64,000 bases of DNA. Source: Ruditapes philippinarum. Its lineage: Eukaryota. The stretch lies in assembly GCF_026571515.1 (NCBI RefSeq), contig NW_026861745.1:1-64000 (forward strand). The letters are read 5' to 3'. Every line of letters begins with the position of its first letter. Position 1 is the first letter of the stretch. The notes beneath the pieces are model-generated. The model was not told where the DNA came from. It searched no databases and saw only the letters and a program-made list of their open reading frames with translations. Positions 48,874-57,300 of this stretch are shown piece after piece. Both the position numbers and the translations under genes were made by a program.

Positions 48874-49006
48874 TTTACCGGCAAGACCGTTGCAACATTT
48901 TCTTAATCATGAGTTCAATATGGTAAAAGAGTTCTTTAAAAGTCAACAGCTACCAATCTGTTTTGCAAATTTTAATTAACAATTTCTTATTTTCACTCGA
49001 TTTTGG

Positions 49007-50038
49007 ATTTGTCTTTTGACGTTTTATCTGTGATACGCAGGCTTCATAACCTCTGATCCCCTTTCAAAATTCCATTTTATTTAGTTCCGCCCATTGTTTT
49101 CTCGTTTAGGGCACACGCTTTTTATTACTTGGGGACCATACGCCGCTTTTCATGGAATGGCACGGAAGTGTCAGATTGAAGGTTCCATGATAACCGCCGT
49201 ATGAACACATCTGCTGATGTTTCTAAATTCACAATTTTACTATTTCATGTTTAAATGTTGAATTCTGCTTAAGCCGGTGCTAGGGGGCATGGACGGTAAC
49301 TTGCACTTTCCAGTACCGTCCATGAACAGGCTCACTCAAACCGAGCCTGCAACATTTTCAATTTTGCCGTGTTGGGCTTTCTTTAGGGATTCTGTATTTA
49401 TCTATTTTATGATCACATCCGTGTTATTTGTGCCGTGTGGCGGCTGTAAAATGTCTCCCCGTACATTTAATCAATGATGTTATATTTTCGATCCTTGAAG
49501 ATCGTTCAGCACGACATTATTGTTGTGCTTGTGGTATTTTTAGTTTCAACTTTACGGAATTTTCTTGTTGGGTGGTTCCAATATTCCTACTTGAATAATA
49601 TTGAATCACCCTTAGGATATGTTGCCTGCTTTTTAAATTTGTCTTTTGACGTTTTATCTGTGATACGCAGGCTTCATAACCTCTGATCCCCTTTCAAAAT
49701 TCCATTTTATTTAGTTCCGCCCATTGTTTTCTCGTTTAGGGCACACGCTTTTTATTACTTGGGGACCATACGCCGCTTTTCATGGAATGGCACGGAAGTG
49801 TCAGATTGAAGGTTCCATGATAACCGCCGTATGAACACATCTGCTGATGTTTCTAAATTCACAATTTTACTATTTCATGTTTAAATGTTGAATTCTGCTT
49901 AAGCCGGTGCTAGGGGGCATGGACGGTAACTTGCACTTTCCAGTACCGTCCATGAACAGGCTCACTCAAACCGAGCCTGCAACATTTTCAATTTTGCCGT
50001 GTTGGGCTTTCTTTAGGGATTCTGTATTTATCTATTTT
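49007..50038. repeat. Identical ~400-bp direct duplication (offset 630 bp)
   Basis: 49007-49408 equals 49637-50038 with no difference that I could see. Confidence 0.9.
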
Positions 50039-50352
50039 TTGGAAAATGTACATAAGTAACCAAACACCACCATTTTAAGTCAGCCTTACAAGTGTGTGGT
50101 CTTATGCCTAAGGGAACTAACCCACAAAATCTTAAGAAATGAGTTCTCTGACCATGAGTACTCTTCATAAAAATCTCTATTATTTAGTCTGGTTCCCAGC
50201 TTCCTATAGTAAAAAATGTGGGAAAATTTAAACATGTGAACTATCCCACTTCAACAGTAAATCTTTACATACAAGTTTGCCAGAGCGAACCAGGAACCAA
50301 TAGTGCTTGATAAGTGTGTATGTTGTTGTGCCAAAGTGAACTATCCAGCAAA

Positions 50353-50481
50353 ATGGCGGAAACTAGAAAATGCCTCGATGAACAAATGGCAAAAATGGGA
50401 AAATAACTGAAACTCTTCTTGAAGAAATATTTCAAGAGGAGAGTGACGACTCGGTGAAAGACCCTGACTATATTCCAAGTG
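50353..50481 (+). pseudogene. Putative shared first coding exon of the Sola element (acidic leader)
   Basis: AAAATGGCG start context; reads ...ITETLLEEIFQEESDDSVKDPDYIPS-G|GTAAAA (phase-1 donor at 50482). Needs one lesion repaired: either +1 A at ~50401 (start 50353) or TGA to CGA at 50379 (start 50370, MPRRTNGK). Confidence 0.6.
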
Positions 50482-51524
50482 GTAAAACCCATTTTGTATA
50501 ATTTATTAAAGATTTAGTAGTTTTCTTAAGTCCATTGAAAATGAAAAAAAGCATGGTGTGGTGGGAGTTTTGTTTAAATGAATTACATAGTATAACATAT
50601 AAAGAAACTTGATGATTCATAATGGTGCCATTTTGCAGAAGGTGTACAGACATGAAATCATGCATTTATAACCTTTGGTTTTGCTTTATCTAAAAACAAT
50701 GGGTTAGTGCACTATAGAAATTTACAAAATACAAAGAGAATGGTGTTTATTATTGGGTTAGTTCACTTTTGGTACTGTAAACAAACCAATTGAAAATTAT
50801 TTTACCAAAATTGAAAAAAGGTTAAAGGAAAGACTTCTAAATTATATTAATGAACACAAATAAATGTTTTACATCAATAATATCTGTTATTGTGAAAATT
50901 ATAATTCTGCAGATTACTATAAGTTTGTTAAATTATTGTATGGTATAAAAAGGATATTCAAGTTTGTTTTCCTACAAATACAGAATTTATTTTCATCGAG
51001 TGGTATTTCACGAGTGGCTGTGGCCACGAGTGAAATATGATTATTTTTCTACAACAAGATGAAAATTTATCGTGTATTAATAGAAAAAACTTAAATTTTC
51101 TGTAATTATTAGAAAGAATTCCCTTTTAATTTTGTATTTTTAAGGAATTTAGAAAAAAAGTAGTCTGGCAAGACACCAGTGAAAATACGGAAAATGAAAA
51201 TGCACATTTTATTTCATCAATATTTCTTAATATTTCATTGATAAGTATAATATAAAATGAAAATATCTATTACATAAACTGCATCACAGGATTGTGAAAA
51301 AAAAAAAACATTTTATTAAAACAATATTACACTTGTGTAATAACATTTTGACGTGACATCAATTGCGTTATATACAAACATAGCGTTAAAGCGAGCACAA
51401 ATTATAATTTTCAGGGTATACGGGCATTTCAGTGCAAACATTTTTATCGCCTGTATATGGACCTTTAAAGATCATTCTGTTTTTTATATTGTTGAATATA
51501 ACGAAATGAATGAAACTGTTACAG

Positions 51525-53534
51525 ATGAGGAAAATTCTGACTATGAAATATCACAGGAAGATATAAATAACAACAATGAAGAAAAAGAAGTTGACCAAAA
51601 CTACCATGTAAAATATCCAGTGGAACATACAGATATTGATGCGGCTTGTAAAAACACAGGTATTATTGAGGCAGATATAAACAGTATTGATTCCCAAGAA
51701 ACAAGATCAATAAACTCTGTTAGTGAACCTATCGTTAATAACAATAAGAGAAAAAGGAGGGCCCCTGAAACATGGGAAAAAAATGTCAGAAAGGAGAAAC
51801 GAAACAAAGGTAAATCCTATACTACAGTAAGTGGCACAATAAAGCCAGAGAAATTTTTTTAAAGACTATGAATGTTTCTGTCCAATGAAATGTAGCATTA
51901 TTCTCAATACAGAAGCAAGAAAGAAGAGTTTTAAAACATTTTACGGGAGTGGTAGATGGGAAATACAAACAATCTACATAAATGCACATGTTAAGTCCCA
52001 CAGTGTGGAAAGGAGGTATACTGACCAAGGTAGAAATTCTAGAAGACAGAATTCTCGATATTATTACCTTAATGACTCAAATGGTACCAAGAAAAGAATT
52101 TGTAAGAATATGTTTATGAACACTCTACAGGTCGATAGTGCTCGAATACACAGAGCTATCGAAAAAATGCAAAGCGGAAACCTGAAAGACTTGAGAGAGA
52201 GGCATGAACCTAGTAATAAAGTAAGTCAAGATAAAGTCGATTTAGTCAAAACCCATATTAATAGTTTTTCTAAGTACACCTCACATTATTGCAGAAGAGA
52301 TACTGAACGCCAATATCTTTCACCAGATCTAAACCTAACGAAAATGTACACTCTTTATAGAGAATGGTGTTCTGAAAACAGCTTTGAGTATGTAAGCATG
52401 TCAATGTATAACAAAGTTTTCTATGATAACTTTAACTATTTTTTTTAAAACACCAGAGAAAGATTCCTGCAAAACATGTGATGCAAATAAAATAGCACTA
52501 ATGGTAGATGATAACGAAAAACGGAAGGAAATTGAAAAGACATACTGAGCATTTAAACATTAGTAAAATAGCACGTGAAGCCCTTAAATTTGATCAGAAT
52601 GTAGTCAAAACAGATAAAAAGCAAGTCACAATCACATTTGATCTTCAAAAAACTTTACCAACCCCTAGAATTCAGACCAGTTTGGCTTACTACAAGAGAC
52701 AGTTATGGGTTTATAACCTAGAATACACTCATATCAAAGTGATGATGAAAAAAGTTACATGTTTATGTGGCATGAAGCTGTTGCTTCACGCGGGGCTCAA
52801 GAGGTTTCTTCATGTTTGAAATATTTTACAAAGAATTTCCTCGATAGTGAAATCAATCATCTGACTGCCTGGTCTGATTCGTGCGGTGGACAGAACCGAA
52901 ACATAAAGGTTTGTTTATTATGGATGCATTTAGTTGCAACCACATCTCTTGAAACTGTTGACCATAAATTTCTCGTTAGTGGCCATTCCTATTTACCTTG
53001 TGATAGTGATTTTGGAGACATTGAACGTTCCCTTAAGTATACTCCTAACATGTATTATCCGACTGAATGGTATGATTTGGTACGTAAATCAAGAAGCAAG
53101 CACCCATTCAAAGTCATAGAGATGTCTTGCAATGATTTCTTTTCAACAGAAAATTTAGAAAAATCCATTATAAACAGAAAAAAGAATGCCAACAACGAAA
53201 AGGTAGAGTGGCTTAAGATTAGGCATATAAGGTTTCAGAAGTCAAGACCATACATAATGCAATACAAGTACACACATGAAGAAACAGAGTTTAATGAGGT
53301 CAACTTAGCACCCAAACGACGAAGCCGTGGACAGGAAGTTCCGGGTATTGATGTTGAAGTTGGTTTGCTATATCCAAATGGAAGAAAAAAAGTCAAGAGA
53401 AGGCAAAGGACCTTAAGGAACTTTTGCCTTACATTCCACTTGTGCATCACAGTTTTTATAAATCATTACAAGTTGACAGATCTATAGAGAATGACGATCT
53501 TTGTGGAAACAGTATTGGCTATAACTTAGAATAA
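51525..53534 (+). pseudogene. Sola1-type DDD transposase (frameshifted)
   Basis: ORFs 51353-51862, 51885-52448, 52508-52819 and 52759-53487 join through 1-bp shifts. Motifs: WEKNVRK..RNKGKSY, CFCPMKC, SHYCR..YL, F.TPEKDSCKTCD, TFDLQKTLPTP..YYKRQLWVYNLGIH, WHEAVASRGAQEVSSCL, WSDSCGGQNRN, FLVSGHSYLPCDSDFG, KDLKELLPYIP..HSFY; stop TAA 53532-53534. Sola1 assignment is from recalled motifs plus the 4-bp TSD. Confidence 0.85.
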
Positions 53535-53555
53535 TTTTCTTGTTTCTCATTCCAG

Positions 53556-54392
53556 TGCGACTGACAGACTTGCCGAATGAGTTGCTCTTGAAAGTTCTTG
53601 GAAATTTGGCGACAAAAGAATTGCTCAAGGTTGCTGTCACTTGCAAATTTCTTTACAATGTTGCACACGAAAAGCAGTTGTGGAAAAATGTCACAATGGA
53701 AATACCACAGGATTCTTTGTATGATGACAACAGTTTTGGACATTTATTTGATCTGCATGCTCAACATATAAATATTTTGAAATTCAAAAGCGCCAAAGGT
53801 CAAATGTATGATATCAATGGAAACCCTGCTGCTATAAATCTTCATTTTCAATTTCAGTTGTGTCGTTGCAGCAGTATAACATGCATTGACTTAAGCAGGA
53901 ATTTGTTAGTGCAAAGTCTAAGTTTTGTTAAATGTATGCCACATTTAAATTTTTTAGATATAAGTGGATGCAACTTTATTGATTCTTCAGAATTACATCA
54001 TTTATCATGTCACCCAGGACTGAAAAAAACTTGAAATGACAAATTTTGAATGCCTTCGGATGAATAAACCTATTGTAGTTGACTTACCACAAGTTGTCAA
54101 TATCTCAGAACTTAATATTGAACGAAGTACATATCTATCGCCTGACCAGTGCACTTTATTGCTTAGTAAGAGCCACCTGAAGGTTTTAGAATTCTCACCT
54201 AAATGGAAGAAACCACCTGCTTGGTGTGTTTTCTATGAAGCTTATCAACATATTGAATTTGGATTGGATTTTCAAGCAGTTTATATGTGTCAGACAAATG
54301 GATTCCGATCTCGAAGATTTATAGACATGATTAATAAAGCGCCATTATGGGATACCTGGGACAGTGATGAATCAGATGATGATTTGAATTAA
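53556..54392 (+). CDS. F-box/LRR protein (FBXL-like) inside the transposon; one frameshift in the A7 run at 54023-54029
   Basis: F-box LTDLPNELLLKVLGNLATKELLKVAVTCKFLYNVAHEKQLWKNV; LRRs ITCIDLSRN, LNFLDISGC, LKKLEM, ISELNIER, LKVLEFS; acidic C-tail; strong acceptor TTTTCTTGTTTCTCATTCCAG at 53535-53555. Confidence 0.8.
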
Positions 54393-57300
54393 TGTTGTTC
54401 AGTTTCAATTGTTCTTACTAGTTTGATTTTTTTAAAACTTCAATAGCTTGGATTAGTTCACTTTGGCATATGAACATGTGATGTTACTTATACACAAATG
54501 CCAGAATGAACTATTCCACAAAATCATGGTTTTAAAAAAAGCCACATAAGCAGTATCAAATAAACAGTTGAGAAACAATTCTTCTTTGTCTATATTTTAT
54601 TTTGTAAAAGTAAAATATTGTCTCCCTGAAATATATTTTGTTGGGGGATTTGGAAACCTTCAGTGGCAATTTTCTGAAAATCGAAAGTATAAGGGTTAGT
54701 CCCATCTGGCATCAGACCACTCAAGTGTAAGGCAACATCATTGATATCGTTGTCATTTTTTAGAATGTGTATAAGGATCTTGTCGTAATAAATAATCAGA
54801 ACCAAATCGAAAAGTATCTCGTATTATTTTTAAATGGTGGTATAAAGGTAAAATGCATCAATCTTTCTAATACATGATGCATGTAAGGAAGAGACGATAC
54901 CATTTTAACTGTAAGAGAACCGTACTAAAGTAACATTTCGTATATTTTTGTAACGTTCTCACGTGAAATATGCATTTGTATCTTGGAACGCAAATAATAA
55001 ACAGTGTCACATCCAAACGCTATATATAACATTTTTTATGACATAGTGGCAAAAAAAGATGACACTCGATGAAACATACGAGAAGTGCAATGAAATAAGT
55101 GCATGTCGTGTCGACTTTATGGCGACGTCTGATTTTTATTTTTGTATTATGATGTTTCTCATTTGTTTCGTAAAGAATATTAAAATAATTAGTTAAGTTA
55201 GTAATTAGATTTTAATACCAAGCACTCGCAAAAACAGACTGTTCCTTGTCATGTGTTAATGGTGCCCGTAAAACTATGTAAGGTTGATTATAAATGATTG
55301 TCGTAAGTCATAAAACATTCATAAAGCCATTTTTATTGATTCTATATACGGTAGTATAAAAGCTAATTAATAAATGATTAATGGCGTGCTTTAGAGAATA
55401 TAATACAAACTTACATGTGCAGTTCAAAAGAAATCCGTTTAACGCGTGCAGCATCTATATTATTATTTGGAAGCATCAGCTTCCATATTTATAAAGACAA
55501 ACATGCCATATTTTAGGATAGATAATGACAAGTAAAAATTTTATGAGGTTAATCGGTCTAAAAATGAATGATTGGAAATGAATGCATATGATTTGACAAG
55601 TTTTTTTTATCGATTTCCATCGATGTTTTATCCTAATGAAGTATTTCATGAAGCTAAAGTTTATAATTTTACAAGGTCACTGTGTCAATATTTATACAAA
55701 TAACATGTCTGTATGAATAGAAAGTATGTCTATTGCCATTTAATGACACTGAAACGGAATCTGTCATGCACTGTTGAAAGGATTATCATAACAAAATAAA
55801 CTCAATAACGCTGCATCATAAGACAACGGGTTTAAAAACACTTTATCAAATATGGTAAGCATAATCACATGTAAATAAAAACAAAACAACAAATCCATTT
55901 GTAAATTTTTTTAAAGTATAATTTTAAACGTGTATTATCAGTTTGTAAACAAATGTAATATGTTTGCCTCTTAATAAAACATTTGTGTTCCGTGTTCAGG
56001 ATATAAAATCGTACTAAACTTCACTAATAATAAAGAAAGAAACTTGATTTATTGACATTACACTTGCGTTCTTTGAAAAGATTCGCCGTATATGTATACA
56101 TCTTTATATATATTCTATTTTATCGTATAGAGATAACCGCAGTATGTAAGTTTTCCAATTTAGAATATTGTCATCTTCCTACGCTATTCTTTTTAAACCA
56201 GTTAAATAAGTTTTTATTGGAGGTAAGTTGAAAAGTTTTACCTTAGGAAGGATTGTTTGTTTTGTTTGGTTTTATGGCACATACACAGTTTAGGTCATAT
56301 GGCGCCGAAACAGGAAATTTAGTAAACACGAGAACTCACAATGTGGCAAAATTGAAAATGTTTTTTATTTAAACCAAAAGTGCAATGTTAATTAAATGAT
56401 AATGTGTCCTGCTTGGTCAACAACCTTTTCATTATTTACCATCCAAACTGTAAAAAAGTATTTACTTTAATTTTCCAATATCTAAAGCTTGACACCGGAA
56501 GCCTAGACAATATCTTAAATATATGAGAATATTGGCTGCGAGGCCGTACTATAACAAACATCTTATTCAGAGCCTAGGGACTTTTGAAAAGGCTTAAAGC
56601 AATACGTTTTGGATATAGAGCATATAATAATATATTAAACATAGTGTTTCACGAACGGAATTTCCCTTGGCGCCATATATCATACTTTGCTATTCTTGAA
56701 AATGTCTTACATATTCTGGTTAACGCCATTATAATCTATAACTTTAAGCAGTGCCTGGTAGATTTACAGTGTTAGGTAGACTTAAAATAAACATTTCTTT
56801 TTAATAACCGATTCCATTTCCTTTACTTATTAGATAGAGTTTATACCGCGAGATTGACTGAACGATTACCTGTGACTTACCAGTGTAACGTTTTTGCAGC
56901 ATACAAATTGAAGTGTACCTAAATGTATTCTCAAAACTGTTTAATATTTAAGCTCATTCTCGCACTGAGAGCATATATATTTTCATTTATTTCAGCCATT
57001 CTGAAATAAAATAAAACACGTTTTATTGCATAGCATAGGAAGATAGACATTACAGTAGGAATAAAATACTCGATCACGATTATTTTCTTTTTTTTTAGTT
57101 GAACAATATATGTATCTTGAAAATTATACCGAATATGACGTCGAAGTCACGCTGAGTAACAAAAACATGTAAGACATTTTCAAATTTTCAAACAGAACGA
57201 AAACTCTTCTCATCTGATAAATACAGCCTATTTTCTGAAACCTTTTATTTTGTTATTTTAATAACCGTTCAATGTTATATTCTATTTTATATTCTATTTT

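What the first reader, a model, noticed from the sequence alone, without database searches (positions are those of the whole stretch)
50353..54392. One leader exon, two mutually exclusive products: transposase sits inside the intron of the F-box gene
Seen: a short acidic exon ends ...DDSVKDPDYIPS-G|GTAAAA (phase 1, donor 50482). Acceptor 1 (TTACAG|AT, 51525) gives G+AT=Asp in frame with the transposase (DEENSDY...). Acceptor 2 (TTTTCTTGTTTCTCATTCCAG|TG, 53556) gives G+TG=Val in frame with the F-box (VRLTDLP...). The F-box ORF has no ATG ahead of the F-box and no room for its own promoter, because its polypyrimidine tract starts on the base after the transposase TAA. Acceptor 2 is much stronger than acceptor 1. 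Inference: alternative 3' splice choice makes the F-box isoform the default and the transposase a regulated isoform. This parallels maize En/Spm TnpA/TnpD and P-element splicing control, but here with an E3 adaptor.
Basis: partly seen in the sequence, partly recalled or inferred. Interest (0 to 1): 0.85.

Follow-up and report, generated by a model that had tools for sequence, protein, structure and literature searches.

The report
Dead Sola1 transposon with F-box gene
This is a broken copy of a jumping gene (a Sola1 DNA transposon) whose ancestor carried, besides its transposase, a ubiquitin-ligase adaptor gene that has no start codon of its own and so probably needed splicing from a shared first exon; no RNA data could be obtained to show this.

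Summary
It has a 1-base deletion in the leader, at least 5 frame breaks in the transposase and 1 in the F-box ORF.

The stretch lies inside a 4,629-bp Sola1 transposon (50094-54722, TSD AAGT). There are about 10 copies in the genome, none intact.

The Skp2-like F-box/LRR ORF is an old partner gene of a Sola1 clade:
- At least 12 other loci carry a homologous ORF just upstream of the transposase, some intact.
- In the two loci read, it follows a leader exon, an intron and an acceptor. One of them has a split AT|G start codon.
- The closest sister family has the ORF downstream, reading TAA-ATG.
- In this family that ATG is replaced by the element's only strong pyrimidine tract plus CAG.

So the F-box exon must be spliced. 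The leader donor is the simplest partner, but an internal phase-1 donor (51810) also fits. "F-box default, transposase regulated" is unsupported.

First readers of this scan noted Sola1 with F-box elsewhere in this genome (s1-806793).

The parts
50090..50093 (+). 5' target-site duplication AAGT
   Evidence: The same 4 bases are at 54723-26. Four other copies have their own 4-bp duplications: ATTT, ATTT, AATT, AACT.
50094..50125 (+). 5' terminal inverted repeat (starts GTGTGGTCTTATGCC)
   Evidence: Homology to five other copies begins here. It is the inverted match of 54691-54722.
50112..50766 (.). 5' subterminal repeats (GGGAACTAACCC-like) at 50112, 50236 and 50336 (+) and at 50701 and 50755 (-). 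They flank the leader exon.
   Evidence: Motif scan and repeat families D2, D3 and I21.
50353..50481 (+). Leader exon. It runs from the ATG inside AAAATGGCGG to the last base G (phase 1). A 1-base deletion breaks it in this copy.
   Evidence: In C8441 it is open for 43 codons (MAETRK...DPDYIPS). C11741 is open from the third ATG.
50482..51524 (+). Proposed intron 1, from GTAAAA to TTACAG. It holds a nested palindromic repeat at about 50944-51396.
   Evidence: The donor is kept in 5 of 7 copies and the acceptor in 5 of 5. The nested repeat has dozens of genomic matches on both strands.
51525..53534 (+). Transposase exon (DUF7869, Sola1 type), about 669 codons, stop TAA at 53532-34. It has 5 frame switches in this copy.
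   Evidence: PF25273 scores 27.9 bits. There are 7,997 relatives. It aligns to its end with 680-800 aa relatives. Frame breaks differ between copies.
51806..51815 (+). Internal candidate donor AAG|GTAAAT (GT at 51810), phase 1, last exon base G
   Evidence: It is the best phase-1 donor on a rough matrix and is present in all copies that hold this stretch. It lies in the conserved N-x-G-x-x-Y coding motif.
53535..53555 (+). Pyrimidine tract plus CAG (acceptor 2), starting on the base after the transposase stop
   Evidence: The closest sister family (C1791) has ATG at this place.
53556..54392 (+). F-box/LRR exon, about 278 codons, stop TAA at 54390-92. There is one frameshift near 54032 in this copy.
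   Evidence: PF12937 gives E 4.8e-12. The SKP2 F-box matches at E 3.7e-7. The model's best structural hits are SKP2, FBXL2, FBXL17 and FBXL3. It is homologous to the ORF1 of other Sola1 families.
54559..54564 (+). AATAAA, a candidate shared polyadenylation signal
   Evidence: It is the first AATAAA after the F-box stop. This is inference only.
54691..54722 (+). 3' terminal inverted repeat (ends GGCATCAGACCACTC), followed by TSD AAGT at 54723-26

Best explanation
Window 50094-54722 is one decayed copy of a low-copy Sola1 DNA transposon. It has TIRs, a 4-bp A..T target duplication and subterminal repeats.

I infer that the active ancestor made one pre-mRNA from a promoter in the 5' subterminal region. 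Its 43-codon leader exon (donor after 50481) was joined either to the transposase exon (51525) or, skipping the transposase, to the F-box/LRR exon (53556). The first join gives a transposase of about 712 aa. The second gives a Skp2-like SCF adaptor of about 321 aa. Both would end at the same poly(A) site.

The F-box/LRR gene is an old partner of this Sola1 clade, not recent cargo. In this family its start codon, which once abutted the transposase stop, was replaced by a 3' splice site.

Shown: the element, its copies, the protein identities, the missing ATG, the acceptor and the sister-family structures.
Inferred: every RNA junction, and what the adaptor targets. I favour a host factor handed to the host SCF ligase.
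For: Element and copies:
- TSDs and TIRs were read in 5 copies.
- An AWWT-type TSD is the Sola1 hallmark (PMC3845634).

Transposase:
- It ends where its relatives end.
- The older copies C10498 and C9602 lack the in-frame ATG before acceptor 1, and C9602, like the young copies, keeps the in-frame stop 7 codons upstream, so the leader must supply the start.

F-box ORF:
- It has no ATG, and it is preceded by the element's only strong pyrimidine tract plus YAG.
- The acceptor AG is kept in 5 of 7 copies and the tract is largely invariant.

Sister families:
- L055 and L057 have intact F-box ORFs. L055 is 26% identical to ours over 141 aa (E 2e-6), and the whole family aligns end to end.
- In both, the ORF follows a leader exon with a GTAAGT donor, an intron of 419-477 bases and an acceptor placed 4-13 codons before the DLP motif.
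- The L057 ORF has no Met at all. The predicted junction AT|G makes the start codon.
- C1791 reads TAA ATG GTG AGA CTG ACA where ours reads TAA, then the tract, then GTG CGA CTG ACA.

Precedent: En/Spm expresses tnpA and tnpD this way (PMC2613891).
Against:
- The leader peptide has no significant similarity to the N-termini of relatives. The best match is DPDYIPS against DSDYIPN, E 0.12.
- Differences between copies show no codon-position bias, so selection on either ORF within this family cannot be shown.
- All copies are broken.
Confidence: 0.5

Rival explanations
1. The F-box exon is joined from a donor inside the transposase exon (51809|51810, AAG|GTAAAT). The mRNA has three exons: leader, the first 95 codons of the transposase exon (acidic stretch plus KRKRR basic patch), then F-box/LRR. 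The product is an N-terminal transposase/F-box fusion, not a product exclusive of transposase sequence.
For: The donor is phase 1, ends in G and would also give Val at the junction. It has the best score of all phase-1 donors and is present in every copy that holds the stretch.
Against: The GGTAAA there encodes the conserved G of the N-x-G-x-x-Y motif, so its donor likeness may be a by-product of coding. Sister-family and database F-box proteins begin 2-10 residues before the F-box, with no long N-terminal extension.
Confidence: 0.15
2. The F-box gene was already dead in this family. An insertion of a T/C-rich stretch destroyed the TAA-ATG coupling, and the ORF stayed open only because little time passed before the copies were made.
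For: The sister family has ATG at this place. No signal of purifying selection is seen within the family. The family is small and extinct.
Against: The replacement is a textbook 3' splice site (80% pyrimidine plus CAG) placed exactly at the first codon. Chance expectation is about 3e-4 per position. All 7 copies that cover the site share it, including those about 22% diverged. The F-box domain scores higher here (45.9 bits) than in the intact sister ORFs (37 and 32.7 bits).
Confidence: 0.2
3. There is no splicing. The F-box ORF is translated from the transposase mRNA by termination-reinitiation at a non-AUG codon (TTG at 53540 or GTG at 53555) just after the TAA. This would echo the stop-start coupling of the sister families.
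For: Sister families have stop and start within a few bases of each other: TGA-A-ATG, an overlapping ATGAGTAA, and TAA-ATG.
Against: Reinitiation after a 700-codon ORF at a non-AUG codon is inefficient in eukaryotes (general knowledge). It also leaves the clean pyrimidine tract unexplained.
Confidence: 0.07
4. The acceptor, F-box exon and poly(A) signal act as a natural gene trap. When the element lands in a host intron in the sense orientation, host exons splice onto the F-box exon.
For: There is a strong acceptor, an exon without ATG and a downstream AATAAA.
Against: No chimeric proteins were found. Phase 1 would fit only a third of host introns. The sister families express the same protein as a standalone ORF.
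Confidence: 0.05

Closest known systems
Maize En/Spm (CACTA) tnpA/tnpD
   Same: One promoter and a shared first exon. The transposase ORF lies in the first intron of the accessory protein's mRNA, and alternative splicing decides which protein is made (PMC2613891).
   Different: Different superfamily (Sola1, with a 4-bp A..T TSD). The accessory protein is a single-exon F-box/LRR adaptor, not the 11-exon DNA-binding TNPA. Here the splicing is inferred, not observed.
Sola1 families of the same genome with F-box/LRR ORF1 upstream of the transposase (L055 = C4552, L057 = C11327, and at least 10 more loci)
   Same: Homologous F-box/LRR protein and DUF7869 transposase, with a leader exon, an intron and an acceptor directly before the first ORF.
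   Different: The gene order is reversed. The two ORFs are coupled by stop-start adjacency instead of a second acceptor. The leader there looks non-coding.
Sister family C1791 (L056)
   Same: The transposase comes first and the F-box/LRR homologue follows. The same GTG-(C/A)GA-CTG-ACA follows the stop.
   Different: It has ATG directly after TAA, with no pyrimidine tract. The copy is heavily decayed.
Drosophila P element
   Same: Splicing choice decides whether transposase is made (general knowledge).
   Different: The P element retains one intron within a single ORF and makes a truncated repressor. It has no second gene.
Viral F-box proteins (polerovirus P0, nanovirus Clink, poxvirus ankyrin/PRANC)
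   Same: A selfish genetic element encodes its own F-box adaptor to use the host SCF ligase (general knowledge, not tested here).
   Different: Those are viruses. No sequence relationship was found, and no target is known here.

Membership tests
Sola1 DNA transposons | 4-bp target-site duplication with an AWWT/AWDT-type preference | tested here: met
   AAGT, ATTT, ATTT, AATT and AACT in five copies. The hallmark is as stated in PMC3845634.
Sola1 DNA transposons | Terminal inverted repeats bounding the element | tested here: met
   GTGTGGTC... and ...GACCACTC, shared by all full-length and deletion copies.
Sola1 DNA transposons | Transposase related to named Sola1 transposases | tested here: inconclusive
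   DUF7869 scores 27.9 bits against a cut-off of 26, and there are 7,997 relatives. No named Sola1 reference sequence was available for comparison.
F-box/LRR (FBXL) SCF substrate adaptors | F-box motif | tested here: met
   PF12937 scores 45.9 bits against a cut-off of 24.3. The SKP2 F-box matches at E 3.7e-7.
F-box/LRR (FBXL) SCF substrate adaptors | C-terminal leucine-rich-repeat solenoid | tested here: met
   The model has alternating strand and helix from residue 100 on, with pLDDT 63-77. The best structural hits are SKP2, FBXL2, FBXL17, KDM2B and FBXL3. Pfam LRR hits alone are below the cut-off.
F-box/LRR (FBXL) SCF substrate adaptors | Binds Skp1 and recruits a substrate | not tested
   No host Skp1 sequence was in hand.
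En/Spm-type two-product expression by alternative splicing | The transposase ORF lies between a shared donor and the accessory gene's acceptor, in compatible phase | tested here: met
   The donor at 50482 and the acceptors at 51524 and 53555 are all phase 1.
En/Spm-type two-product expression by alternative splicing | Two mRNAs with the same first exon observed | not testable with these tools

The most novel reading that the evidence does not exclude
A large clade of Sola1 transposons in this animal genome encodes its own SCF substrate adaptor (F-box/LRR) as a working second gene, and some families are still intact. Different families co-express it with the transposase in different ways: ORF1 stop-start ORF2, TAA-ATG, or, in this family, a start codon turned into an alternative 3' splice site. 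The adaptor would hand a host factor, or the transposase itself, to the host ubiquitin ligase. Other Sola1 families that carry deubiquitinase-like domains point to the same pathway.
Probability: 0.3. Interest if true: 0.8.

Novelty: new variant of a known kind. Interest (0 to 1): 0.6.

Why it matters
Accessory genes of animal DNA transposons are poorly known. An F-box adaptor kept alongside the transposase across Sola1 families whose transposases are only about 28-46% identical would be a transposon counterpart of the viral F-box proteins that hijack host ubiquitin ligases. I found no paper that links Sola1 and F-box.

The family studied here also shows how the same gene pair can switch from translational coupling to splicing-based co-expression, the En/Spm solution, in an unrelated superfamily.

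The intact sister families (for example C4552 and C3623, whose F-box ORFs read identically) make both ideas directly testable.

Tried and rejected

Searches that gave nothing:
- A protein search with our F-box ORF found nothing among proteins of 120-380 aa.
- In the genome, our F-box ORF matches only copies of this family, so no donor host gene was found.
- Ten full-length relatives of the transposase from other sources carry no F-box.
- Inverted-repeat searches did not reveal the ends of the sister elements L055 and L057.

Tests without power or support:
- Codon-position and synonymous/non-synonymous counts show no bias for either ORF. This holds between copies and for differences shared by the old copies, which also share a stop and so may be duplicates of one decayed copy. 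The test has no power here.
- Leader-peptide homology to the N-termini of relatives was not significant. The acidic D-Y-x-P motif occurs in only 5 of 65 long relatives.

Readings rejected:
- A read-through or frameshift fusion of transposase and F-box. The frames differ, there is no slippery site, and the transposase ends where its relatives end.
- An upstream acceptor at 51415 (TTTTCAG|GG). It has the wrong phase, and an in-frame stop follows it in other copies.

Other limits:
- The bacterial promoter scan is irrelevant here.
Exons were searched one by one, by reference.
Full report
**1. The observation**

- The acidic exon ends ...DPDYIPS plus G at 50481, followed by GTAAAA.
- TTACAG ends at 51524. 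AT at 51525 gives Asp with the leader's G, then EENSDY.
- The transposase stop TAA is at 53532-34.
- A 21-base tract (TTTTCTTGTTTCTCATTCCAG) fills 53535-53555.
- TG at 53556 gives Val with the leader's G, then RLTDLP.
- The F-box frame has a stop 10 codons upstream and no ATG until after the F-box.

The second acceptor is not a chance match. A tract with at least 16 of 20 pyrimidines followed by YAG occurs 41 times in the 128 kb of both strands of the window. It occurs once in the element, at exactly this base.

- The ATG at 50353 is out of frame with the exon end, because of a 1-base deletion. The leader is open in copy C8441.
- The transposase reading switches frame five times.
- The F-box ORF switches frame once near 54032.

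**2. What it is**

Homology to other copies runs from 50094 to 54722.

Five copies have the same ends (GTGTGGTC... and ...GACCACTC) and different 4-bp duplications: AAGT, ATTT, ATTT, AATT, AACT. This A..T tetranucleotide is the stated hallmark of Sola1 (PMC3845634).

A GGGAACTAACCC-like motif is repeated in both subterminal regions and flanks the leader exon.

The family is small.
- Four near-full-length copies are 92-96% identical.
- There are two deletion derivatives.
- A few older fragments are about 72-78% identical.
- None is intact, and the frame breaks differ from copy to copy.

The transposase matches DUF7869 and has 7,997 relatives. It aligns to its very end with relatives of 680-800 aa. 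So it is complete at the TAA and needs no F-box extension.

The downstream ORF is a real F-box/LRR protein.
- PF12937 gives E 4.8e-12.
- The SKP2 F-box matches at E 3.7e-7.
- A model of moderate confidence has SKP2, FBXL2, FBXL17, KDM2B and FBXL3 as its best structural matches.

**3. The F-box gene is an old partner of a Sola1 clade**

While checking other DUF7869 loci of this genome I found two families with intact ORFs, L055 (C4552) and L057 (C11327). Their transposases are 28-29% identical to ours. In both, an F-box ORF of 257-272 codons lies directly upstream of the transposase.
- The two ORFs are 34% identical to each other over 230 aa (E 4e-39).
- Ours aligns with L055 over 141 aa, including the repeats (26% identity, E 2e-6).
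- Ours aligns end to end with the whole family, database members included.

A genome search with the L055 ORF gave 86 matches, many of them open. On at least 12 contigs the match lies about 2-2.7 kb upstream of a transposase match on the same strand. One of these is a second locus whose F-box ORF reads identically.

The closest sister family is C1791 (L056), whose transposase is 43-46% identical. Its homologue lies downstream, as in ours.

No host paralogue of our ORF was found.

**4. How the sister families bear on the splicing claim**

In L055 and L057 the F-box ORF follows the same layout: a leader exon ending in a strong donor (...AAAAT|GTAAGT...ATCAT|GTAAGT), an intron of 419-477 bases, and a pyrimidine tract plus AG that lies 4-13 codons before the DLP of the F-box.

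The L057 ORF contains no Met codon at all. The predicted junction AT|G creates the start codon in frame. So a leader-to-F-box splice looks like the usual arrangement in these families.

The transposase follows by stop-start adjacency: TGA-A-ATG in L055, and an overlapping ATGAGTAA in L057.

In C1791 the order is transposase then F-box, and the text reads GAA TAA ATG GTG AGA CTG ACA. Ours reads GAA TAA, then the pyrimidine tract, then GTG CGA CTG ACA. The start codon of the sister family is thus replaced in our family by a 3' splice site. All seven copies that cover the site share the tract.

**5. The transposase side**

Acceptor 1 (TGTTACAG|AT) is unchanged in all five copies that hold it.

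The in-frame ATG 19 bases upstream is present only in the three youngest copies. C10498 and the old copy C9602 share a different, ATG-less text, and C9602 and the young copies keep an in-frame stop 7 codons upstream. The older master element therefore needed an upstream exon for its start codon. The leader is the only candidate: it is open for 43 codons in C8441, and its donor has the right phase.

I could not show that the leader peptide is homologous to the N-termini of relatives. The best match has E 0.12.

**6. Most likely mechanism, and its limits**

Inferred: one pre-mRNA, one donor (50481|50482) and two acceptors. One join gives a transposase of about 712 aa, with the F-box exon as its 3' UTR. 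The other gives an adaptor of about 321 aa. A shared AATAAA lies at 54559.

This is the En/Spm layout (PMC2613891).

I put this at about 0.5, for four reasons.
- No RNA could be examined.
An internal donor at 51810 (AAG|GTAAAT) has the same phase and the same last base, and it scores like the sister-family donors.
- Substitutions between copies show no codon-position bias, so selection inside this family cannot be shown.
- The claim that the F-box form is the default rests on pyrimidine content alone. The upstream acceptor is transcribed about 2 kb earlier, which may favour it.

In this window nothing functional can be made from any isoform.

**7. Novelty**

Alternative splicing that yields a transposase and an accessory protein is known (En/Spm, P element). 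A Sola1 clade with a conserved F-box/LRR partner gene did not turn up in the papers I could search.

First readers of this scan noted related things on other DNA of this genome: s1-806793 (spliced F-box/LRR cargo), s1-792537 (stop-start coupled PHD ORF) and s1-804442 (a deubiquitinase-like domain). Of these I checked only what is cited above.

Noticed in passing
L055:3349-7200 (G000:C4552, minus strand); second locus with matching ORF reads at G000:C3623:447396-450856: An apparently intact Sola1 element. It has a leader donor AAAAT|GTAAGT, a 419-base intron, an F-box/LRR ORF (240 aa from its ATG), the junction TTT TGA A ATG, and then a 901-aa transposase counted from its ATG (907-codon open frame). 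At the C3623 locus the F-box ORF match is 100% identical and the transposase match reads the same (29% to the query), which suggests recent activity. A 100% identical 240-aa protein is in the public protein collection (P0162).
   Followed up: partly
L057:2130-5719 (G000:C11327): The F-box ORF of 272 open codons contains no Met. The donor ATCAT|GTAAGT (2199) and the acceptor TAACAG|G (2676) would create a split AT|G start codon, giving M-S-N-L-L-D-L-P. The transposase ATG overlaps the F-box stop (ATGAGTAA). The motif AAAATGGCGG lies upstream of the donor, as in our leader.
   Followed up: partly
L052:1600-5478 (G000:C14537) and L054:2-3052 (G000:C2674): Long open Sola1 transposases (1,293 and 1,017 aa) carry an N-terminal Herpes_teg_N domain (PF04843, the herpesvirus UL36-type protease region) at 42 and 50.8 bits. 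This is a second link between Sola1 and the ubiquitin system in this genome.
   Followed up: no
window 50944-51396: A nested repeat lies inside proposed intron 1. It has dozens of genomic matches at 66-79% identity on both strands, so it looks like a palindromic MITE. Older copies of the element break homology here.
   Followed up: no
window 49001-49930: A 630-base unit is repeated in tandem (99% identical) just upstream of the element. A related sequence is inserted inside the C1232 copy of the element, so it is a repeat family of its own.
   Followed up: no
L039 (G000:C11523), corresponding to window 50329-51405: This copy has lost the leader exon and most of intron 1 through a 1,077-base deletion. 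It keeps the derived ATG just before the transposase exon.
   Followed up: partly
L035 (G000:C10498), corresponding to window 53554-53557: The AG of acceptor 2 is mutated to AA. By coincidence this makes an in-frame ATG CGA CTG (M-R-L-T-D-L-P). It is a single copy and looks derived.
   Followed up: yes
L036 (G000:C15011) and G000:C7858: These are deletion derivatives that keep about 1.1 kb of the 5' end and 0.77 kb of the 3' end. C15011 has its own TSD, AACT. They are non-autonomous members of the family.
   Followed up: partly
L056:5338-5610 (G000:C1791): After TAA ATG GTG AGA CTG ACA the decayed sister copy has about 215 extra bases. These are bounded by GTGAGA and a pyrimidine tract plus AG, and they precede an F-box-like MPDELIL.IYTYL. 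This could be an intron or an insertion. I could not resolve it, because the copy is full of stops.
   Followed up: partly
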